This document shows, one piece after another, positions 84-17,300 of a stretch of 64,000 nt of DNA. The DNA comes from Octopus bimaculoides (taxonomy: Eukaryota), in the NCBI RefSeq assembly GCF_001194135.2, contig NC_069003.1, positions 35,914,284-35,978,283 of the forward strand, written 5' to 3'. Position 1 is the stretch's first letter. Each line of letters starts with the position of its first letter. The position numbers and the translations under genes were made by a program. Below the pieces are notes generated by a model. The model was not told where the DNA came from, made no database searches, and saw only the letters and a program-made list of their open reading frames with translations.

Positions 84-300
84 GGCAGCAAGCTGGCGAA
101 ATGCTTAGCGGTATTTCGTCTGCCACTGCATTCTGAGTTCAAATTTTGCCAAGGTTGACTTTGCCTTTTATCCTTTCGGGGTTGATAAATTAAGTACCAG
201 TGAAACACTGGGGGGTCAGTGTAATTGACTTGTCCCCTCCCCGAAAATGGCTCCCCTTGTAGCAAAATTTGAAACCATTATTATTATTATCATTATTATT
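83..300 (+). mobile_element. tRNA-derived SINE, family A (internally deleted, CpG-decayed copy)
   Basis: Same sequence family as 28873, 34890 and 63765; B-box-like GAGTTCAAAT; ends in (ATT)n. Confidence 0.8.
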
Positions 301-1309: not shown

Positions 1310-1399
1310 GCTTTGGTGGCAGAAAACAATATTCCTCGTCATTAGTTAAACCTTCGCAAGGAATAAGAGTTGAGTTTGGTCCACATTCTTGTTGTACGG
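1310..1399 (-). CDS. Exon: FZ-CRD5 part b
   Basis: gtttttag|CC...AAGC|GTAAGT, 90 nt; VQQECGPNSTLIPCEGLTNDEEYCFLPPK. Confidence 0.88.
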
Positions 1400-2952: not shown

Positions 2953-5326
2953 AGGAAGGTGCAAGTATTTGAGGAAGGTGTGTATAGGTCGACGAATGGA
3001 TGGATAATTTGATAGATAGATGCAGGTATGGCTATGTGAGTAAGAAGTTTGCTTTGCAAACACTTGGTTTTAGGTTCAGTTCCACTGCTCCCTAGAAAAC
3101 CCTCCTTTCTTTGTATATGGCCGATAATGTCTGTGTATGCAGCAAGCAAATCACCATCTCATATATGGGAACAGTATCCCATTCTGAATCAGGCATAAGC
3201 TTTGTAGAGGCAAGATTAGTTGATGAAAAGCCATAACAGAACTAGCTTTCTATTATGAAACAAAAAATGCATTAGGCCCATGAATGGAATACTTACTTAG
3301 ACATGTACTTTTACAGGAGAATTTGGAAATGCCTTTTACACATTTGGGGAATAATAAACCACAGAAGTAATGAGCAGCCAACGCGGAACAATTCCTGGCC
3401 AGCACTGGTTCAGCATTTTTTTGGAAACTACGTTTCATAGATTCTAAATCATTATCATTGAGAAGATTTGGAGCCATTGTCTTAGAATAACCAGCTTCCA
3501 CACATGTTGGGAAGTCCAACACAATACACAAATCTGGTGAAAATAAAATGTAAATGATATTACATATAATATGCAAACAATGAAAATGAGAGAACGCATA
3601 TACATATATGCATACATATACATATACATATACATACACATATACATATATGCACACACAATGTATGTAATACAGAAAAATATTGCAAAGTAAAATTCAA
3701 ATCTCTATTGCTCCTTATAAGCAAAGCAGTGTGATTAAGGTAAGTATAAGCACAACTATGTGTTTAAGAAGTCTTACAAAGACCACATCAATCTCACTGT
3801 GTCGGATCCTGGCTAGCACCTCACTGTTTCAGCCTCAGCTGGATTATCCCTCTCCTGTGAATGACTTTGCAAATGGCAGTGGTTGTAATTTCACTAAGAT
3901 GCTAAAACAGTTTTATTAGGATTTGAAGCTATAACTGTAGGTACTGAGATGATTACCAGAAGTTATTAATTACTTACCCAGCACCAATTATGCCACCCTC
4001 ATCTACAAGACCACCTACATTTACATCAATTATGCCACCCTCATCTACAAGACCACCTACATTTACATCAATTATGTCACCCTCATTTATAACAATTATG
4101 TCATCCCCATCTACATCTATTAGGCCTCCATTAGCTAAATTAATTATACCATCCTCATTTAAATCCTCACCTATTATGTTGCTCATATCAACAATAAATA
4201 ATCTAACCTGGAGTTAATGTTGTAACCTCTGCTTTTGTTGTTGTGGTTGTGGTTGTTGTAGCTGTTGTTGTTGTGGGTGTAGGACCTGTAAAGGAAAGGA
4301 AAACCATTTAATTGATTTATTTATAACTAACAAAAAAAAAAAACAGGAATGTGATTGTAAAACAAAGAAAACAATGAAAAGAAAAAAGAAACAAAGAGGA
4401 ATATTTACGGTCTGTTGTGATATTTGGTGGAAGAAAGCAATACGCTTTGTCATCAGTTAAGAAATCACAATCAAAGATGATTGCCGATTTTCCACAGGCT
4501 TGTTTCACGGCTGAAACAGGAATAACACTTTATTTAAAGAAATTCTGGTTTATTATAGAATGTGATTGTAAACGAGAAGCTGCATTTTATCATTACGAGG
4601 TGGTTTCAAAGAGTTCCAGGAATAGCTCTATCGCGTGTCAACAGATGGCAGCACATGGTTGCAGGCACAGTGAGAAGCAGTGTGCCAAGTGACATCACTG
4701 TGTTTACTTGGCAAGTTGTGAAATTTGTGTTTTTGTGATCAAGTCTATGCTGTAGTCTGTGATTTTGTCGTGGAAGGGAACAAAAAGCCAATGTGAAATT
4801 TTGCATTAAACTTGGGATTTTGCTACAGAGACATTGGGCATGCTTCAGCAAGCTTACAGTGATGAGGCAATGGATCGTATACAATGTTCGAGAAAGAGCA
4901 TCCCTGGAAGATGATGAAAAATCTCAAAGACCTGCTATGAATGTCACCTCCAGAAATGTGGTATTGTGCATCACAAATTCATTCCCCGGGGTTGGACCAT
5001 CAATCAAGAGTCCTACTGAGACGTTTTCTCTCTCAAATCACTTATGCTCTATCGTATATGCACACTTACTTTACCCATCCAGTGGAGCATACTGACTCCA
5101 TTTCTTTTTAGCCTTCGAATGTCCTCAGTTGTCAGTCGACATCTCACTGCCATCTAGAATAGCTGTTTGTACACAGGCATCATACAATCTGCCTTTCACT
5201 GCATTTATGGATGGATGGATGGATGGATGGATGGATGGAAGATTTTTTTTTGTGTGTATGTATGTGTATACATGAGTGTGTATGTATGTGTATATATGAG
5301 TGTGTATGTATGTATAGATTACCCAA

Positions 5327-5364
<38 letters not shown>

Positions 5365-8300
5365 TCAGAGAAACAGAATGAATTTGAAATTTGCTAGCAC
5401 ATCTCTGGGAATTATCTGAAATTATATTTACATGTCTTTGGAATAACGCAGAAATGTTATCACAAAAGTAAGCTTACCTAGACAAGTTGTTTGACATGAA
5501 AAACGAATTTGTCCCAAAGTATTGCATTGTGGGAAAATGAGACCACACACATAGTGCAAGGCAAGTGGAGAGCATTTACGTTGGATAAGAGGCAAGGCCA
5601 GGGACTTGAAATTTTTCTCTGCTGATTGGTAGTCTTCATCACCAAAGACATTTGGAAACATGGTGTTGTTGTAACCAGCTTGTTCACAAACATGAGATTT
5701 CATATCAAAGCAAAGATCTACAAAGATGAAACAAAGAGAAAAAAGGAAGAAATGAAATATTAAAATGTGATGCACAGATACAGTGAATACATTATATATA
5801 TATATACACATATATATATNNNNNNNNNNNNNNNNNNNNNNNNNNNNNNNNNNNNNNNNNNNNNNNNNNNNNNNNNNNNNNNNNNNNNNNNNNNNNNNNN
5901 NNNNNNNNNNNNNNNNNNNNNNNNNNNNNNNNNNNNNNNNNNNNNNNNNNNNNNNNNNNNNNNNNNNNNNNNNNNNNNNNNNNNNNNNNNNNNNNNNNNN
6001 NNNNNNNNNNNNNNNNNNNNNNNNNNNNNNNNNNNNNNNNNNNNNNNNNNNNNNNNNNNNNNNNNNNNNNNNNNNNNNNNNNNNNNNNNNNNNNNNNNNN
6101 NNNNNNNNNNNNNNNNNNNNNNNNNNNNNNNNNNNNNNNNNNNNNNNNNNNNNNNNNNNNNNNNNNNNNNNNNNNNNNNNNNNNNNNNNNNNNNNNNNNN
6201 NNNNNNNNNNNNNNNNNNNNNNNNNNNNNNNNNNNNTGTGTGTGTGTGTGTGTGTGTGTGTATAAGAGAGAGAGAGAGAGAAATACAGATACATTTCCAA
6301 TCTTCTTATCAACTATTTCACATGAAATCACAGTCATCGATTTTTAGCTTCATGTTGATCTCAGTATTGATCTTTACTTTTTCTCACTCAACTTCTTATC
6401 CTTTGATTAGTATTCCAGACATTAAATATTGTTCGTGATGGATTTTTTTTGTTTGTTTGTTTTGGTAGTGAGCAGTTTAAGAAGGATTTGGTTGCAAATT
6501 TTAGCAAGGTAAACCCCTGTTTAGAAGCTTGCAAGGCTGGCCTAAACTTTTTAGTTATGGGTGGGTGGTGATGGTCGTTTTTATAGTAATAATGTTTATA
6601 GTAATGATGATGACCTTGAAAATGAAGAGGATAATGATGAAGAGGATGAAGATAATATTAGAGATAGCAACAATGATGACAATATAGAAAGTGAAGATGA
6701 TGATGATAATAAAGACAACATTGATATTATTAATAATGATAATAACATGGATAATGAAAATGTCAGCAATGCTCATTGCAACCAACTTGTCTAAGGTCAG
6801 GATGATAATTAATTGCAAAAATAATAATAGAATAATAAAGGTTATAATACCAGGTGCTGGAGTTTGTGACTTTGTTGTCTTACTGGAGACAGTGGCTGCA
6901 ACAAAAATAGATAGCATGTCACAGCAGTTTGGAAATAGATAAAACTCAGCAAACTATGCTGTCCACCTGATGCTCAACCATTCTCTAACAAACCAGTGTA
7001 ATGTTTCTTGGACACATCTACCCTCACAAACACACACATACTACATATATAAGAAAAATCAGGAATTTCAAAAATGATATCTACAACAATAGACTGTATA
7101 GAAATGAAAAGGAAAGCAATGAGAAATATGTGGGGGTGAACAAACATTATTTAATTAATATAATACATTATCATTAAGATAAATGTCATCAACTTCCAGG
7201 TGTTTAAAAGTCTACAGCCAGTCTGTGACAATTTGTTTATACCAGAATTATCTTCTAAGAGAAATATCATTAAATGATGCTAGACAGGTTGAAACGATTG
7301 TAGTGATCAATAAAGATTCTTATATCTTCTGTTCCTCTCATTAATTACATGCCCAACGGACATGCTTTACTGGCAAACTAATAGGTGTATACCACACGAT
7401 TTATTAACAATTACAAAGAATACGCAAACTGGTGCATCTTTCAAATTTTTCTTTTAATTTTACGGTTGGTCATACAGCATAATTAGTTGGTTAAAGTGAC
7501 CAATACTATGCTGTGTGACCAACTGTAAAATTAAAAGAAAAACTTGAAAGATGTACCAGTCTCTGAATTCTTTGTAATTGTTTGAAATTTACACTTTTGA
7601 AAATATGAATAATCCAGTGAAACGAACCCAGAGTAATCCATCAGAAGAATTGCAGTGAGATTGTTAATACTAAGTAATCACCAATGGTTATTACTACCTG
7701 ATGCAGTTAACCAAAACCTGCATGTGTATAATTTATTTAATGTGATAGGGTATGATTTGAAGGGGATTTGACTTCTATATCTAGCAGATTACACAATAAT
7801 CTACTTCAGTATAGGCAGAGGGGATAGTATTATACAATGTTCCTGCAATCCTACTAATTTCAGGATTAAAAATATTAACCAGTAAAGAATGTCATTTTAA
7901 TTGGTCAGGGACAACTGTTAGGAAATAGAAACAACAAACAGGCAGGACGTACTTGATGCAGTGGTGTGTGGTTCAGGTAGGAAACAGTACATCTCATCAT
8001 CAGTCAAATGTTCACATGGCAGGAGAGTTGCATTTTTACCACAGTTCTTTTCTATGGCTGGTATAAGAAAAAAAAAAAAAGAGAGAGAAAGAGGTAATAG
8101 ATTTGTGAATTTAAAACATGATGGTTCAGGCAACACTGTGCATATTTTGAGTGAGTAATTAATGTTTGAATTCAATCAGTTCTGCTTAATATTCTCATGT
8201 TGATAAACAAAGGAAATGCACCAAAACTAAGCATTANNNNNNNNNNNNNNNNNNNNNNNNNNNNNNNNNNNNNNNNNNNNNNNNNNNNNNNNNNNNNNNN

Positions 8301-11300
8301 NNNNNNNNNNNNNNNNNNNNNNNNNNNNNNNNNNNNNNNNNNNNNNNNNNNNNNNNNNNNNNNNNNNNNNNNNNNNNNNNNNNNNNNNNNNNNNNNNNNN
8401 NNNNNNNNNNNNNNNNNNNNNNNNNNNNNNNNNNNNNNNNNNNNNNNNNNNNNNNNNNNNNNNNNNNNNNNNNNNNNNNNNNNNNNNNNNNNNNNNNNNN
8501 NNNNNNNNNNNNNNNNNNNNNNNNNNNNNNNNNNNNNNNNNNNNNNNNNNNNNNNNNNNNNNNNNNNNNNNNNNNNNAAGAAAATTTTGCTTGACCATTT
8601 TCACATTTTGGGAACAACAAACCACACATATAATGTAAACTGAGGGGAGAACAACCACTGTTTATGATGGGAAGTGCAGAAGTATTAAATGATATTATGG
8701 CTTCTTCAGCAGTTTCATCTTTGAAATTTGGGAACATGGTTCGAGAATAGCCAGCATCAAGACATTTCTGGAACTTCAGTGGGAAACAGTTGTCTGTCAA
8801 AGATATAAAAGAGTTTAGAAAATGTAGTTGGCTGTTAATTTCCTTTAAACGTTTATTATTTGGTGTCAAAATGTTCATTGCAGCAACGGCAACATGGTCA
8901 CAGACATGATTACACTGCATTGGCTGCAGTTGGTGCAATGAACATTTGTATATTCTTTACTGATAACACCTCAAAACATAGTCTGGCCTAATATCTTAGA
9001 AATCCATTGAAATAACTTACAACCCACAATGACAATGATGTGACAATGACAATGATGATGATGATCTAGAAAAATAAAAGTATAATTTACCATTTACATC
9101 TGTAGTTTTGTGTGTAGTTAGTGTTGTCTGATGAACAGGGTAGGTAGACCTGGCAGGAACTGAAGAATGAAAAAACATTCAGAGATAAACAAAACCAATT
9201 CCTTTGACAACACTATCACCACAATTGACTGATTGGGGGAAAGAAGAGAGAGGGAAAAGCAACAACATGTGGGGTGGGGGAGAGAATGGAGAGAAGAGAG
9301 AAGAGAAAAAGTTACAGATTTTGATTTTAGATTGTATCGTCTTTGGACAACACATTTATTACTGATAATCTTGCAAGAAAAAGTAAGCTGTTATATAATT
9401 GTGAAAATATACACAAATACATACATCGTAAAACTAAAGGAAACATAAGAACAGAAATTGCTAATACGAGAACAAAAGAACACACACATACACACACACA
9501 CACACATCATGATATATCTCGACTTTGCAAAAGCCTTGATAAAGTCAACCATGGCATGATATGTCACAAGCCTTCATGATCTCAGCATAGTTGGAAAACT
9601 TGGAGAGTGGCTACATGACTTTCTAAAAGATGGAAGTCAAGCAATGGTGGCCAATGGAACCACCTCTAAGGAAACACAAATAGTGAGAGGTGTTCCCCGA
9701 CGCACTCTCTTAGGGCCACTGATATTCATAATGGTCTTCTCAAATAAGCCTTCAGCTGCTCAGAAAGCTACCCTTGTTAGCTATCTAGACAATAAAAAGT
9801 CTCTTGGAGGAAACAAAACCCTGAAAATGTTGCACACCTGCAATCAATCCCCTGTAAAGACTTTGAAGTCTTAGTTTGAATTTTCTTAAGCATTACTAAA
9901 TGTCTTCTATACTGAGAATTCCTGGATCTCTTCTGGGGACTATATCCCCTTTGCTCAGTGGAGCGCTACCTATAAATCACATCCATGGATAAGCAATTGT
10001 TGGGCACATCTACAAAGAATATCCCACTGGCTAATTTTGAAAAAGATTTACGACATATGATAACCCCCTCCCTCTTCCTGAACTAGCTCTCTTATCTCCT
10101 CTCACTATTCCCCGTCTTAACCCCCATAACCCTGCCAACCTTCCCACTGCTCCCCTCTAATACAGCTAGCTCTCCACATTTAATCATTCCATCCTGGAAC
10201 TTCTCTACATTAAGATCTGAAATGTAAAATCTTCTCTACCCTGATGACAGAGGCTCATTTTATCCTATGTTGATTGTATCCCCTATGGCCACATATTGTG
10301 ATCGACCACATCTACCAACATTATTATGGATCTCCAAGCCCCCAGAAACAACTGTTGGACTTATAACACCTTTCTTTCACCCCTTTAATTGCCTCTGTCA
10401 TTTGTACTCTGTGTAAGTTAGATGTATTAATATAAATCTCTAGATATCTATACTTAGAAATCCTTCATTTGAAAGTCTCCACCTTTTGCTTTCTCTCATT
10501 TTTCATGTATACATATTTTGCTTCATATCCAAACTAGTATATTTAATATATCTAATTTGTTTATCTGCATAATTGCCTCTATATACGTAAATATATGTAT
10601 ATATATATCATTGCTATTATTTTGAACTGTCATATGTCCAAATTTGACCAAATGCATTTTTTTCAATATCTCTTTTTGCTTGCAGTAGCCACTAATCTTG
10701 ATCAAACTATTGCCTCTCCAGCTGCTTCAGATGCCAAGATAACAGAAATCGTCAAAGTGTATTAAAATGCTTTTGCTATAGAATGGTGAAACTTTTTTTT
10801 GTTTTGTTTTTTTGTTTCTGAAAAAGCAACATTTTGGACTAATGACATTTTTGCATAACAGCAGTGACATATATGAATTATAGGTATAAGTAGGTATGTG
10901 TATGTGTATATATATATATATATTATTTTATTTTATTGAAGCTGAAAAACTTTATAAACTATTAACTCAGAGTTTCCTGACTCCATTCATCAGACAGTCA
11001 GCAGCATTCAGAACATACAACAGTTTAATAGTTTATAACTATTTATATGTATTCATGATTGTAAGTAGATACATAAAATTGGTTACCTGGAGTTGTTGTA
11101 GAAGACACAGGAAGGAAACAATGTTCTTCACTGTCAGACAAGTTTTCACAATCAATAATTGTACTGTTAGAGCCACAGCCCTTTTGAACAGCTAATAGTT
11201 TAAAAAAAAAAAAAAGAAAACAATCATCAAAAGATTAAAAAATATGCCTAAATATTTGTTTTGTTTATTGCACCTTTTGAGCGTTTTTGCCCCAAAATGC

Positions 11301-14300
11301 AGCCTTAAATATTTAGCATAAAAATAAAATAAAATAAAATATAGTTAAAAAATTCAATTTATAGATTGAAGGAATGTTTGAAATGTATGCATGTAGAAAT
11401 GGATTGTAGAAGAACATGGATTGGACCAGAAATCCTGTAAAGAACCAAGTGAGTCTGATATATTAATGACTGATCTGTTGTTTCAAAGCACATGGCCAGC
11501 AGCACAAGACCACCTTGACCAGTAAGATCAATGTAACTGATGCTCTTCTTCAACAGCTACAAGTTGACAACTGCAGGAAAAATACAAGCAAGGGCTCCAT
11601 TTCCAGAAGGTTGACAGACCCACAACACAGGACTGAAACTAGTGATTAGAATAGGGATTGGAGGAGGGTATTATGGTGGGGATGAGAGAAGCAGAGATAA
11701 GTGAGTTGGAGTTAAAGGACCCTCCAATACCTGTAGAATTGGTGGAATAAGGATACCGTATATTTGTAGAGCAGAGGTTGGAGTGGTAACTTCATGCCAA
11801 CTAATCAGGTGGTCTTTATATTTTGGATGAATGGTTTCAGGTGCAGTCCCATTCTGTAGTTGCCTGGAACAAGGGTCTCCTGTAACGGCTCCAGACCAAC
11901 AAACAAAGACATTGAAATTCTGCCATGACAAATTCTGTCTGACAGATGCAAGCATGAGAAAATGGATGTAAAAATGGCAGCAATAGCAGCAGTGGTAATG
12001 ATGGCAAGGACAATAATGACAACAAAGAATCTAAGGTGCCAGTGAGGGATATTGGTGCACCATACCAGATCTTTAAAGAGAGGGAAGGTGGGGGAAAGGA
12101 AAAGAGGAAAGAGAGAGCATGAACAAGATATTGCTGACTTACCAAGACAAGTGGACTTGCAAGAAAATTTTGCTTGACCATTTTCACATTTTGGGAACAA
12201 CAAACCACACATATAATGTAAACTGAGGGAAGAACAACCACTGTTTATGATGGGAAGTGCAGAAGTATTAAATGATATTATGGCTTCTTCAGCAGTTTCA
12301 TCTTTGATATTTGGGAACATGGTTCGAGAGTAGCCAGCATCAAGACATTTCTGGAACTTCAGTGGGAAACAGTTGTCTGTCAAAGATATAAAAGAGTTTA
12401 GAAAATGTAGTTGGCAGATTTAAACAATTCAGTTTCAATTGTTAATTCAAATATTATTTAAGCAACATGTTAGAGAAAGTCCAAATTAGAAAGTACAATT
12501 GATCTTTGACAGATCAGTCAAGAGGAGTCGCTTAAATATATTCATATGCTGATGGTATTTAGAACTTTAGAGATTCCTAACTTCCCCTGGACAAAGATCA
12601 GTCTCTCACCAAGTCGCCGATGTATGGATTTCAGCCCACTACTCTTAGCTAAATGAAACACTTCACAATTATAAAAGACCCCAGCCATATAGTGCTGGAG
12701 TGTTCTTTTCCATAATTGCTATTTCCAGGTATATCAAGTGAGTAATAGAGATATCTTCCCGGGAAACAGCAAAGTTTGTATGACAAGTCAGAAAAAATTG
12801 TTCCTATACAACTTGGTTTGCAGTAATTCAAAATCCTAACAGCTTGGGTAGCAATAATTTCTCTTAAAACAATTGGTGTATTTAGAAACCAAGCGTGGGC
12901 CATGTTAAACTTAGCCAGGAGATGCATGAAGAGACAGAGGATGAATATAGGAAAATATAAGTAGTTTACCATTTGTTTGTGTTGTCGTCCATGTAACATC
13001 TGTTGCTGTTGTTTGATGGCGAACGCTGGAGGGTCTGATGCTACCTGAAAAAGGAAAAAAATTAAAGCATAAAGAAAACAATATTTTATTTAACAACAAT
13101 ATCACCATAGGGCCATTAAGTGTTAATATCCTCTCTTGTCACATCTAAAGCTACCACAATAGTGTATGGTTAGAGGAGATACTTGTAATTTCATTCTTTG
13201 GCACAAATTAATTGAAACCAATTGCTTAAATTAGTTTGAAAATATATTTAAAACAAAAACAATGAAAAATATCAAACAATGTTTGATAGAATGTACTTTT
13301 ATAAAGGCTATTTTGAACAAGTAGATTTATTAAATTATCAGACTATTCTCAATTTATCTTCAGAGACTGAGATAGCATACAAATCTATACAAATTCCCCT
13401 TAAATTATATTTTATATTCTAAAGAATCATTACAAAATGTAATCCTAGATAAACTACAAAAAAAAAACTTTTGGATAGAGACAACTAGAGCAATTTTGGT
13501 TACATGTTGATGATAGATGACCTGGGGTTAAACAACAATTAGTTTCATCTAATGATCCCGGCAATTATAAGAATACTGGTCAGTATAGACGTGTTCTATG
13601 GTAGATATCCCCAATGTCAACCCTAGTTTCTTTCACTGTCCTATAGTCAATAAAATAATTAAAGGTAATATAATGATGTGATCCAATTAGTAATACCATC
13701 TTTCTGCCAAGACATCAAAGTGGCCACCTGTCAAGTGAAATTGTAAAAAATAACAAGTCTTTGGGACATACTGCAACAATGATGGTAGGGTTTCATTACA
13801 TGAAATAATTTAAGTTAGGGCTGAGCAGCTGGGGAAGGAAGACGTACTTGATGCAGTGGTGTGTGGTTCAGGTAGGAAACAGTACATCTCATCATCAGTC
13901 AAATGTTCACATGGCAGGAGAGTTGCATTTTTACCACAGTTCTTTTCTATGGCTGGTATAAGAAAAAAAAAAAAAGAGAGAGAAAGAGGTAATAGATTTG
14001 TGAATTTAAAACATGATGGTTCAGGCAACACTGTGCATATTTTGAGTGAGTAATTAATGTTTGAATTCAATCAGTTCTGCTTAATATTCTCATGTTGATA
14101 AACAAAGGAAATGCACCAAAACTAAGCATTATCTCCTGATTTCTTCCAGAAACTCCCTTACACTTTAGTGCCCATGACACAAGCAATCCAATAAGCTAAT
14201 CCAATAGCTACCTGTTTTGGAAATCCCTGTTCTAGGCACTACATCACACCTAATTACTTTATCCTAAATTCCAAATTTCACCAACCTTCTCTTTGACTCA

Positions 14301-17300
14301 TCACGTAAACTCTTCCAGCATTTACTTCCTTTATTTTATCTCCCAGAAACAACAGAACACATTTAAGTTCTTAGCTTTACCCCAGAAAATTCTTTACAAT
14401 CATCATAATCAAAATAATTAGCAAGTGAAATAATTAATGAAACAACTTCAACAAGATATTGCTGACTTACCAAGACAAGTGGACTTGCAAGAAAATTTTG
14501 CTTGACCATTTTCACATTTTGGGAACAACAAACCACACATATAATGTAAACTGAGGGGAGAACAACCACTGTTTATGATGGGAAGTGCAGAAGTATTAAA
14601 TGATATTATGGCTTCTTCAGCAGTTTCATCTTTGAAATTTGGGAACATGGTTCGAGAATAGCCAGCATCAAGACATTTCTGGAACTTCAGTGGGAAACAG
14701 TTGTCTGTCAAAGATATAAAGGAGTTTAGAAAATGTAGTTGGCAGATTTCAACAATTCAGTTTAGTATGATGTATTGAATGAGAAATATTAACTTAGCAG
14801 AAACATTGATAAAATGAAAAAAAAACATTAAAGAATATGGACAGATATATGTTGGAAACCATCAAGCTTTGGACATATATTGGGGAAGGATGATACATTC
14901 TAGGGTAAAGCTATACTGATTTGAAGTTGAGAAATAATGATAGTAGGGATATATAAGGGGACGGTTTCAGAAGTTGTTAGGGGAGGCCTATAAAAAAAAT
15001 AAGGTAAGATAAAGCAAAAGAGAATGAGGTTTTATTTCAAGTATTACCATCATCACCACCATTTGACTGTTGTTCAGATAGCCACACAGCTTGTCTCTAA
15101 TCAAGGATGCTTTCAAGACCTGTGTCCATGGTGTCAAAGCAGGTTTGGCGTGTGTTGTGTTTTTGTTTATATAAAGTGAAAATGGAATAATATAGACAGA
15201 AAGAGAAGCCATGACTAAAACTGAACATGAGTGAGGTTGAGTAATGGAATTAATTGGAAAGTTTAAATAATGTATGGAGATTTTTGAACAATGAGGAATT
15301 CTTGGGATAATGGGTTGAAATTTGGGTTTAAATAGGAATCTAATGTTTAGAATTGGTTAGAAAGTTAAGAAGCAGATGACATATGGATAAAAGAAAAACA
15401 AAGAGATGAGAGGAAGGTGAGATTTATGACAATGAAACATTTTCTACCCTTTATACCTGTAGTTGTTGTTAATTTTGATGTTGTTGTTGTTGTTGGCACT
15501 TCTGTTGTTGTTGTTTTTGTTGTTGGCACTTCTTTTGTTGTTATTGATGTTGTTGGCACTTCTGTTGTTATTGTTGTTGTTGGCACTTCTGTTGTTGTTG
15601 TTGTTGTTGGCACTTCTGTTGTTGTTGTTGTTGTTGGCACTTCTGTTGTTGATGTTGTTGTTGGCACTTCTGTTGTTGTTGTTGTTGTTGGCACTTCTGT
15701 TGTTGATGTTGTTGTTGGCACTTCTGTTGTTGATGTTGTTGTCGATTTTGTTGTTGTTGTTGGCACTTCTGTTGTTGTCGATTTTGTTGTTGGCATTTCT
15801 GTTGTTGTTGTTGTTGTTGTTGTTGGCACTACTGGTGTTGTTGGATAGTTTGTACTGAGTGTGGTAAACTGACCTGTAAGATGAAATAAAAGATTCAGAG
15901 AGAAAATCCTCCACAAAGACAACCAACAAACAGTCGAAAAAAAAAAAGAATTATTTTACATATTAACCTCCACTGATTTCAGTTGACATTTCATTCTACC
16001 TGTTCCATCATCAATCACCAAACGATTCCCTTTTATCTTGATTGTTGTATTTACACATTTCCTTTGACTGCATCTGAATCTTTATTTCTAATACATTTTC
16101 CATAGTTTTAGTTGTTTGATATGAATTCCGACAACATTTTACAGCACAGTAATATAAATAAAAGAGTCATGCTTAGAAGATTGAACCTACCATCCTAGAT
16201 AGGCTACTGCCATCTTGTGAGTTTATTTAACCCTTTAACATTCAGATTTCTTTGATTAATTCAGAACAATGGGAATAAATAAGCATTACATTTAACATAC
16301 ATTATCCTGTAACTTTGAGATTTCAATGGTGTGTTTGTATATTTTGAGAATGACATTGTAGGGTAGGTGTGAGAGGCTGGATCTGGTCAGTTTTAACATA
16401 ACACAAGTAGAACATTTGGGCCAAATATGGCTGGATTAAATGCTAAAAAGTTAAGCAAGACGAGTTGAATTAGCAAGTAATAACTTTGCTCACCACCTAA
16501 AAGCATTATTGTATGGACAATCAAAGCAATACTCTTCACAGTTTAGCAGATGGTACACACCATACATCTACTGAACTTTCTACATATCTTTTTTTCCCAA
16601 ATTTAGCAGCCACAATTAACCTGTTCTAACATACTACGTATCTAACCTGTTGTGAACAGCTCGAATACCATACAATATCATACAAAGTGTGCAATGTTTC
16701 ACTTGACTGAAGTGAAGTACAGCATATTTAGTTACTGCTCCAAAATGTTTGGAAATCATATTCAGGCCATAGATCTGTCCACTATAAAACTGCAATCACT
16801 TTCTTCCCCACAAATCTTACCACCGACAACAACAACAACACAACTATCACAGAAAATTCAAATAAATAAGCTGAAATTCAAAGCTTACCATCAATAGAAA
16901 TGTCGCTATCAGGAAAAAACTTTTGGATTAAGGTAAGCAGATTATTAAATTGTTTCGTTATAGTGTTCAGGATTATTCGATATAGGATAATCACACTTCC
17001 TGGCCTGTAATGAGAACAGAATTGTTGTTGAGAATTATGTAGATATTTGCATAAATATAGATTGATAAACATGAAGTTATCCATGGTAATTGATAATCAT
17101 AAAATTATCCATGGTGATTGATAAGAATACATGTATCTATAATGAATGATGGGCAACTAAAATGAATGCTCATAAAATGGTTCAGCAACAGGCAAACTTT
17201 CAAATTTCTGATGTCCACAAAAAAAAAAAATTCTTCAAAGAATTTTAAATATTCACTGAATATAAATGTTTGTTTTTATTGAACGGTAACTTTACAGAAG

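What the first reader, a model, noticed from the sequence alone, without database searches (positions are those of the whole stretch)
7946..14763. Exon-bounded, mosaic homogenisation of CRD1, CRD2 and CRD3
Seen: CRD2a differs from CRD1a at 3/234 nt, and the similarity stops about 59 nt upstream and 21 nt downstream of the exon. Yet its partner CRD2b is strongly diverged from CRD1b (AVQKGCGSNSTIIDC vs AIEKNCGKNATLLPC). CRD3a-intron-CRD3b is identical to the CRD1 unit where visible, with identity ending 7 nt past the b-exon donor and 39 nt upstream of the a-exon acceptor. At the one informative upstream base CRD3 matches CRD2 (aaaag), while its exon matches CRD1. Linker exons and outer introns are unrelated or diverged. 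Inference: a simple tandem duplication would copy linkers and introns too, so this pattern suggests ongoing intragenic gene conversion (concerted evolution) among old repeats.
Basis: partly seen in the sequence, partly recalled or inferred. Interest (0 to 1): 0.72.

Follow-up and report, generated by a model that had tools for sequence, protein, structure and literature searches.

The report
Gene conversion among octopus Frizzled-domain repeats
Three neighbouring copies of a Frizzled-type domain inside one octopus protease gene keep overwriting parts of each other by gene conversion; comparison with Octopus vulgaris shows this is real, but it is a well-known kind of repeat evolution.

Summary
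The window is Octopus bimaculoides (CM046623.1). The finding lies on the minus strand in LOC106874472, a type II membrane serine protease named "corin-like". Its domains run SEA, mucin stretch, five Frizzled (Fz) CRDs, LDLa, SRCR, trypsin, MAM. Each CRD is split into exon a (234 nt) and exon b (90-105 nt).

- Unit 1 and unit 3 show 0 mismatches over 291 nt and 1 over 255 nt.
- Units 2 and 3 share a 314-nt patch around exon a with 5 mismatches.
- Exon b of unit 2 is only 55% identical to b1/b3.
- The gap flanks are collinear with unit 3 (341 N against 357 nt expected). The gap hides the last 18 nt of exon a1.

One reader detail is wrong. At base -17, CRD1 equals CRD2 and CRD3 is the odd one.

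The gapless O. vulgaris locus has the same five CRDs and the same mosaic, with all flanks orthologous by position. Inside the patches, paralogues group by species: 12 sites against 0 for exon b, and 4 against 0 for exon a. That is concerted evolution by gene conversion, not an assembly artefact.

"Exon-bounded" is only partly right. The 3' limits are old and shared by both species. The 5' limits in O. bimaculoides are indel junctions with 5-nt microhomology. This is a known phenomenon in a new gene.

The parts
13841..14743 (-). Unit 3 block (exon a3, 518-nt intron, exon b3), near-identical to unit 1
   Evidence: 291/291 and 254/255 identity to 7946-8236 and 8578-8832.
7946..8832 (-). Unit 1 block (exon a1, intron, exon b1), interrupted by the assembly gap
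   Evidence: Its downstream flank, 7719-7945, is orthologous to the flank of O. vulgaris unit III.
8237..8577 (.). Assembly gap of 341 N. It hides the last 18 nt of exon a1, its donor site and about 339 nt of intron.
   Evidence: Unit 3 has 357 nt in the same interval. The same gap is in GCA_001194135.2.
12122..12435 (-). Unit 2 converted patch: exon a2 plus 59 nt upstream and 21 nt downstream
   Evidence: 309/314 identity to 14450-14763. One search gives the variant sites.
14471..14704 (-). Exon a3 (234 nt, phase 1-1; first seven cysteines of the Fz CRD)
   Evidence: Pfam Fz, E = 3.9e-12.
13848..13952 (-). Exon b3 (105 nt; last three cysteines)
12970..13044 (-). Thr-rich linker exon between CRD3 and CRD2
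   Evidence: Read. Matches residues SSIRPSSVRHQTTATDVTWTTTQTN of XP_052831925.1.
12143..12376 (-). Exon a2. Differs from a3 at 3 sites: P to S, F to I, and one silent.
11087..11191 (-). Exon b2, not homogenised. It is 55% nt identical to b1/b3 and 100/105 nt identical to O. vulgaris bII.
9091..9159 (-). Thr-rich linker exon between CRD2 and CRD1
8578..8793 (-). Visible part of exon a1 (216 of 234 nt), identical to a3
7953..8057 (-). Exon b1, identical to b3
8828..8832 (-). GCCAA microhomology at the 5' limit of the unit 1 patch. It is the junction of a 1,015-nt length difference from O. vulgaris.
12433..12437 (-). TGAAA microhomology at the 5' limit of the unit 2 patch. It is the junction of a 484-nt length difference from O. 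vulgaris.
6851..6895 (-). Linker exon between CRD1 and CRD0
5478..5717 (-). Exon a of the fourth CRD (old, about 55% identical to a1-a3)
4409..4510 (-). Exon b of the fourth CRD
3297..3533 (-). Exon a of the fifth CRD
1310..1399 (-). Exon b of the fifth CRD
15457..15880 (-). Mucin-like exon (27-nt repeats, TTTEVPTTT) that splices directly to exon a3. The start coordinate is approximate.

Best explanation
The three N-terminal Fz CRD units of this protease gene are old tandem repeats. They have exchanged sequence by non-reciprocal ectopic recombination (gene conversion) between units 2-6 kb apart.

In O. bimaculoides at least two transfers are visible:
- An older one of about 314 nt covers exon a of unit 2. 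It shows 1.6% divergence from unit 3.
- A very recent one of about 900 nt covers exon a, the intron and exon b of units 1 and 3. It shows 1 difference in 546 readable nt.

Exon b of unit 2 lies outside any patch and evolves as an ordinary orthologue.

The patches stop where homology between units stops. Two 3' limits predate the split from O. vulgaris. The 5' limits in O. bimaculoides are indel junctions.

Shown: the mosaic, its presence in a second species, positional orthology of the flanks, and grouping of paralogues by species inside the patches.
Inferred: the molecular route (double-strand-break repair copying from a paralogous unit without crossover), the direction of transfer, and the number of events.
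For: 1. Mosaic in the window.
2. The same five-CRD layout in gapless O. vulgaris DNA, and in the O. sinensis protein XP_036368490/91.
3. Flanks, linker exons and b2/bII align by position at 86-92%. The bases just outside the 3' limits are position-specific in both species.
4. Inside the patches, the b core has 12 species-grouping sites against 0 positional and 0 cross. The chance that all 12 fall on one partition is 5.6e-6. The a core has 4 sites where all O. bimaculoides copies differ from all O. vulgaris copies, including a synonymous and two intronic sites, and 0 positional sites.
5. Paralogues are closer than orthologues. Within O. bimaculoides they differ by 0-1.4% and within O. vulgaris by 1-6%. 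Positional orthologues differ by 2.4-4.1% in the a patch and 6.8-11.2% in the b patch. Unconverted introns differ by 8-14%.
6. The result does not depend on the gap-broken unit 1. Units a2 and a3 lie in uninterrupted sequence, and the O. vulgaris paralogues alone show the pattern.
7. The copy number is five in all three species, which fits conversion rather than unequal crossover.
Against: - The 100% identity of unit 1 and unit 3 in O. bimaculoides rests on a short-read draft with a gap inside unit 1. Gap filling could have borrowed reads from unit 3, so the interior identity may be overstated.
- Only one other species could be compared at the DNA level, and there is no outgroup. Polarity of substitutions, direction of transfer and the deletion-or-insertion question are therefore open.
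- No population data exist to show conversion in progress.
- The a-exon signal rests on only four sites.
Confidence: 0.85

Rival explanations
1. Assembly artefact. The near-identity was made by the assembler collapsing or cross-filling a repeat around gap 8237-8577.
For: The gap sits in the middle of unit 1. The window has 9 gaps in 64 kb. The chromosome-scale release GCA_001194135.2 carries the same gap, so it is not an independent check.
Against: An independent, gapless assembly of another species has the same layout and mosaic. The unit 1 b1/flank junction is collinear with O. vulgaris unit III. Units a2 and a3 lie in uninterrupted sequence. The gap estimate (341) fits the 357 nt expected from unit 3. 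One base near the edge distinguishes unit 1 from unit 3.
Confidence: 0.04
2. Homogenisation by unequal crossing-over (repeated loss and regain of units) rather than by gene conversion.
For: Direct repeats 2-6 kb apart can recombine unequally. The O. vulgaris gene model with three CRDs looked at first like such a deletion.
Against: The O. vulgaris genome in fact encodes all five CRDs; the model merely skips exons. Crossover would duplicate or delete linkers, b2 and the introns between units. Those are single-copy and orthologous by position in both species. The patches are short (0.3-0.9 kb) and interstitial.
Confidence: 0.07
3. Independent recent duplications of the CRD in each lineage, with no exchange between old repeats.
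For: Paralogues are more alike within a species than between species.
Against: All flanks, both linker exons and the divergent b2/bII are orthologous by position. The 3' limits are the same to the base in both species.
Confidence: 0.02
4. Strong purifying selection alone keeps exon a identical in the three units.
For: Homogenised a exons differ less between species (2.3-3.0%) than a0 or a-1 (5.9-7.9%).
Against: Identity extends through intron sequence: 179 nt plus 39 nt in O. bimaculoides, and up to 480 nt in O. vulgaris. Species-specific shared changes include synonymous and intronic sites.
Confidence: 0.02

Closest known systems
Apolipoprotein(a) (LPA) kringle IV type 2 repeats (from my own knowledge, not tested here)
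   Same: A protein domain encoded by two exons is repeated in tandem within one gene. The units are kept near-identical, introns included, by recombination between units.
   Different: In LPA whole 5.5-kb units are identical and copy number varies greatly, which points to unequal crossover. Here the copy number is five in three species, and only sub-unit patches of 0.3-0.9 kb are homogenised.
Human fetal globin HBG1/HBG2 conversion with a fixed boundary in intron 2 (Slightom et al. 1980; from my own knowledge)
   Same: A non-reciprocal transfer with a sharp limit, beyond which the copies are old and diverged. The paralogues are closer to each other than their age allows.
   Different: Those are two separate genes, not domain repeats within one reading frame.
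Intragenic concerted evolution in repeat-rich genes such as spider silk AcSp1 (PMC3563967) and Schistosoma polymorphic mucins (PMC2576457); both came up and were not read in full
   Same: Repeats inside one coding sequence are homogenised within species.
   Different: Those repeats are mostly within single large exons or whole-unit arrays. Here the unit is a folded ten-cysteine domain split over two exons, and the two halves have different histories.
Vertebrate corin (atrial natriuretic peptide-converting enzyme)
   Same: A type II membrane serine protease with Fz, LDLa, SRCR and trypsin domains. NCBI names the octopus protein corin-like.
   Different: By my own knowledge corin has two Fz domains and no SEA, mucin stretch or MAM domains. 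The octopus protein has SEA, a mucin exon, five Fz and three MAM domains. Orthology was not tested.

Membership tests
Frizzled-type cysteine-rich domain (Pfam PF01392) | Profile match above the curated cut-off | tested here: met
   47.1 and 45.9 bits against a cut-off of 32.1; five Fz stretches in XP_052831925.1; the best solved relatives are the sizzled and Frizzled-4/2/7 CRDs.
Frizzled-type cysteine-rich domain (Pfam PF01392) | Ten conserved cysteines | tested here: met
   seven cysteines in exon a and three in exon b, in all five units.
Concerted evolution by gene conversion | Paralogues within a species are more alike than positional orthologues between species | tested here: met
   In the b core the distance is 0 within O. 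bimaculoides and 6.2% within O. vulgaris, against 6.8-11.2% between species. In the a core it is 0.4-1.4% and 1.0-3.4% within species, against 2.4-4.1% between species.
Concerted evolution by gene conversion | Species-specific substitutions shared by the paralogues | tested here: met
   12 sites in the b patch and 4 in the a patch, with no site supporting a positional grouping.
Concerted evolution by gene conversion | The repeats predate the species split (flanks orthologous by position) | tested here: met
   collinear 86-92% alignments of every flank, the linker exons and b2/bII.
Concerted evolution by gene conversion | Interstitial tracts without change of copy number, which separates conversion from unequal crossover | tested here: met
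   Five CRDs in O. bimaculoides, O. vulgaris and O. sinensis. The patches are 0.3-0.9 kb.
Concerted evolution by gene conversion | Conversion events seen segregating in populations or pedigrees | not testable with these tools
   No read or population data were available.
Collapsed or cross-filled repeat (assembly artefact) | The pattern is absent from an independent assembly | tested here: not met
   The pattern is present in gapless O. vulgaris OX597836.1.
Corin orthologue | Corin domain order (two Fz separated by LDLa clusters, SRCR, protease) and orthology by phylogeny | not tested
   Only the domain content was seen. It differs in having SEA, five consecutive Fz and MAM domains. The name is NCBI's.

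The most novel reading that the evidence does not exclude
The conversion limits are held in place by selection. On this reading the middle CRD keeps a private C-terminal lobe (exon b2, conserved between species), while its N-terminal lobe is kept identical to its neighbours. That would be concerted evolution operating at sub-domain resolution and maintained across the genus, implying that the three CRDs must share one binding surface but differ in another.
Probability: 0.15. Interest if true: 0.5.

Novelty: new member of a known kind. Interest (0 to 1): 0.35.

Why it matters
This is a clean, two-species case of intragenic gene conversion acting on parts of a folded domain, with limits mapped to the base. 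It has three practical consequences:
- It explains why three public gene models of this locus disagree. Identical exons and a gap mislead the annotators.
- It warns that domain trees of these CRDs will reflect conversion rather than duplication history.
- It marks a spot where the O. bimaculoides reference needs long reads.

It does not open a new question in biology.

Tried and rejected
- A word-index protein search with the CRD3-linker-CRD2 peptide found nothing, although orthologues exist. The exhaustive profile search found them.
- An exact look-up of a genomic ORF covering exon a2 found no independent contig.
- O. sinensis DNA could not be fetched. Isoform X2 is not on record and the gene range of X1 is too long. 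That species was used at the protein level only.
- Residual homology between the introns just outside the patches was sought. It was weak or absent, apart from about 75% identity hugging the two linker exons.
- Assigning the five octopus CRDs to the three CRDs of the decapodiform orthologue failed, because all pairs are about 50% identical.
- Paper searches found no earlier description of this locus.
- An ORF next to a reverse-transcriptase-like stretch in the intron (9644-9874) gave no Pfam hit.
- I first read the three-CRD O. vulgaris protein as evidence for a lineage-specific expansion or deletion. I rejected that once its genome was seen to encode all five.
Full report
**What is there**

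The window is a gap-rich draft of a eukaryote, with nine N runs in 64 kb. The finding lies on the minus strand. A translated search with one repeat found five Frizzled-type cysteine-rich domains (CRDs) in a row. Pfam Fz matches at E = 3.9e-12, and the best solved relatives are the sizzled and Frizzled CRDs.

Each CRD is split into two exons. Exon a is 234-240 nt and carries seven cysteines. Exon b is 90-105 nt and carries three cysteines. The CRDs are separated by short Thr-rich linker exons. Every exon is phase 1-1. Upstream lie a transmembrane exon, SEA-domain exons and a mucin-like exon of 27-nt repeats.

The sequence matches O. bimaculoides proteins XP_014777695.1 and XP_052831925.1 exactly. 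The locus in GCA_001194135.2 (CM046623.1) carries the same 341-N gap. The full protein has SEA, five Fz, five LDLa, SRCR, trypsin and three MAM domains. NCBI calls it atrial natriuretic peptide-converting enzyme-like.

**Check of the observation**

Self-BLAST and a base-by-base register confirm the pattern.

- Unit 1 (7946-8832) and unit 3 (13841-14743) are identical over 291 nt. They differ at one base over a further 255 nt.
- Unit 2 shares only a 314-nt patch with unit 3 (12122-12435 against 14450-14763, five mismatches). The patch runs from 59 nt upstream to 21 nt downstream of exon a.
- Exon b2 is 55% identical in nucleotides to b1 = b3. That is as far apart as any old pair in the array.
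- Three differences in 234 nt against 47 in 105 nt gives p = 1.6e-24.

Both sides of the gap align to unit 3 in the same order and orientation. Unit 3 has 357 nt where the gap has 341 N. The flanks are therefore consistent with one continuous unit. The last 18 nt of exon a1 and its donor site are unread, so the frame there cannot be verified.

- The -59 and +21 limits are those of CRD2 against CRD3. CRD1 stops at -39.
- At the single variable base, -17, CRD1 equals CRD2 and CRD3 is the singleton. All three O. vulgaris copies agree with CRD1 and CRD2 there.

**The decisive comparison**

An exhaustive profile search, followed by a search with its best hit, found the orthologues in O. vulgaris, O. 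sinensis and a decapodiform clade. The O. sinensis protein has the same five CRDs and the same mosaic. Its aI, aII and aIII are nearly alike, bI resembles bIII, and bII matches O. bimaculoides b2.

The O. vulgaris locus could be fetched as DNA. It is L001, 67.8 kb, with no gaps. It encodes all five CRDs, although its annotated protein skips six exons.

Alignment of the two species shows every flank, both linker exons and b2/bII collinear and orthologous by position, at 86-92% identity. The array therefore predates the split of these species.

Inside the patches the picture reverses.

- In the exon b patch (-97 to +7), 12 informative sites group the two O. bimaculoides copies against the two O. 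vulgaris copies. No site groups by position. The chance that all 12 fall on one of the three partitions is 5.6e-6.
- In the exon a patch (-39 to +21), four sites separate all O. bimaculoides copies from all O. vulgaris copies. These are an Asp/Gly codon, a synonymous site and two intronic sites. No site supports a positional pairing.
- O. vulgaris has its own internal mosaic. aII and aIII share two exon sites, while aI and aIII share the downstream intron.

This is the signature of concerted evolution. It holds even if the gap-broken unit 1 is left out.

**Where the patches end**

The 3' limits are the same in both species. They lie 21-22 nt after exon a for unit 2/II, and 7-8 nt after exon b for units 1/3 and III/I. 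The bases beyond each limit are orthologous by position. These limits are old.

The 5' limits differ between the species. They are at -59 and -39 in O. bimaculoides, and at about -480 and -188 in O. vulgaris.

The two O. bimaculoides 5' limits coincide exactly with junctions at which its introns lack 484 nt and 1,015 nt that O. vulgaris has. In O. vulgaris, a 5-nt repeat (TGAAA and GCCAA respectively) sits at both ends of the extra segment. The simpler reading is microhomology-mediated deletion in O. bimaculoides, possibly during repair. Without an outgroup, the direction is an inference.

So the "exon-bounded" appearance is partly a consequence of intron shrinkage and is not a rule of the process. 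In O. vulgaris a further 60 nt of 87% identity lies upstream of the 97% core between units I and II. That fits an old duplication whose edges are no longer converted.

**Mechanism**

Most likely (confidence 0.85) this is recurrent non-reciprocal copying between direct repeats 2-6 kb apart, without crossover. The copy number is five in all three species, and the sequence between the units is single-copy.

In O. bimaculoides there are at least two events of different age.

- The a2 patch shows 1.6% divergence.
- The unit 1/unit 3 block shows one difference in 546 nt.

Of the 13 sites at which O. vulgaris bI and bIII differ, O. bimaculoides carries the bIII state at 11 (distances). This hints that unit 1 was the donor, but the polarity is unproven.

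**Rivals**

- An assembly artefact cannot explain the pattern, because it recurs in a gapless assembly of another species. It remains possible only for the exact level of identity inside unit 1.
- Unequal crossover, independent duplications and selection alone are each contradicted. The evidence against them is the positional orthology of the intervening sequence and the identity of intron sequence.

**Comparison and novelty**

Intragenic concerted evolution of tandem domain repeats is well known. By my own knowledge, examples include the LPA kringle IV-2 repeats, and fixed conversion limits are known from the fetal globin genes. Silk and mucin examples turned up.

No description of this octopus locus was found. 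It is a new member of a known kind.

The one mildly unusual feature is that the two halves of a single folded domain have different histories, and that this split is conserved across species.

**Limits**

- Only one other species was compared at the DNA level.
- There are no reads, no population data and no outgroup.
- The signal in the exon a patch rests on four sites.

Noticed in passing
L001 13536-21108 (O. vulgaris OX597836.1): The annotated O. vulgaris protein CAI9739445.1 has three CRDs because the model splices exon aI straight to exon bIII. It skips six intact exons (bI, linker, aII, bII, linker, aIII) that the genome encodes.
   Followed up: yes
window 7953-12376: The two RefSeq models of O. 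bimaculoides disagree here. XP_014777695.1 joins a2 to b1, skipping b2, a linker and a1. XP_052831925.1 includes all exons but truncates a1 at the gap (ENGQAK|SIEKNC).
   Followed up: yes
window 15458-15843: A mucin-like exon of 27-nt tandem repeats (TTTEVPTTT) lies directly upstream of CRD3. The stretch is clearly longer in O. bimaculoides than in the O. sinensis and O. vulgaris proteins.
   Followed up: partly
window 7406-7582: A 179-nt inverted repeat (85% self-complementary) lies in the intron downstream of exon b1. It looks like a MITE-type hairpin.
   Followed up: no
window 9520-9760, + strand: A stretch in the intron reads like a degraded reverse-transcriptase fragment (DFAKA..DKVNHG..), judged by eye only. 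The neighbouring 76-aa ORF (9644-9874) gave no Pfam hit.
   Followed up: partly
window 95-246; L001 12341-12448, 15019-15151, 24187-24321, 35338-35573: A short interspersed repeat of about 100-240 nt at 74-84% identity recurs in several introns of the locus in both species.
   Followed up: no
L001 27537-28663; window 3982-4161: A long tandem array with register shifts in multiples of 42 nt lies after exon b of the fourth CRD in O. vulgaris. It is much shorter in O. bimaculoides.
   Followed up: no
window exons a1-a3 against a0 (5478-5717) and a-1 (3297-3533): The homogenised a exons differ less between the two species (2.3-3.0%) than the non-homogenised a exons of the fourth and fifth CRDs (7.9% and 5.9%).
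   Followed up: partly
P0153 / P0216 (Logan transcripts; Acanthosepion pharaonis CORIN): The decapodiform orthologue has three Fz CRDs where Octopus has five. Which octopus CRDs are the extra ones could not be resolved, because all pairs are about 50% identical.
   Followed up: partly
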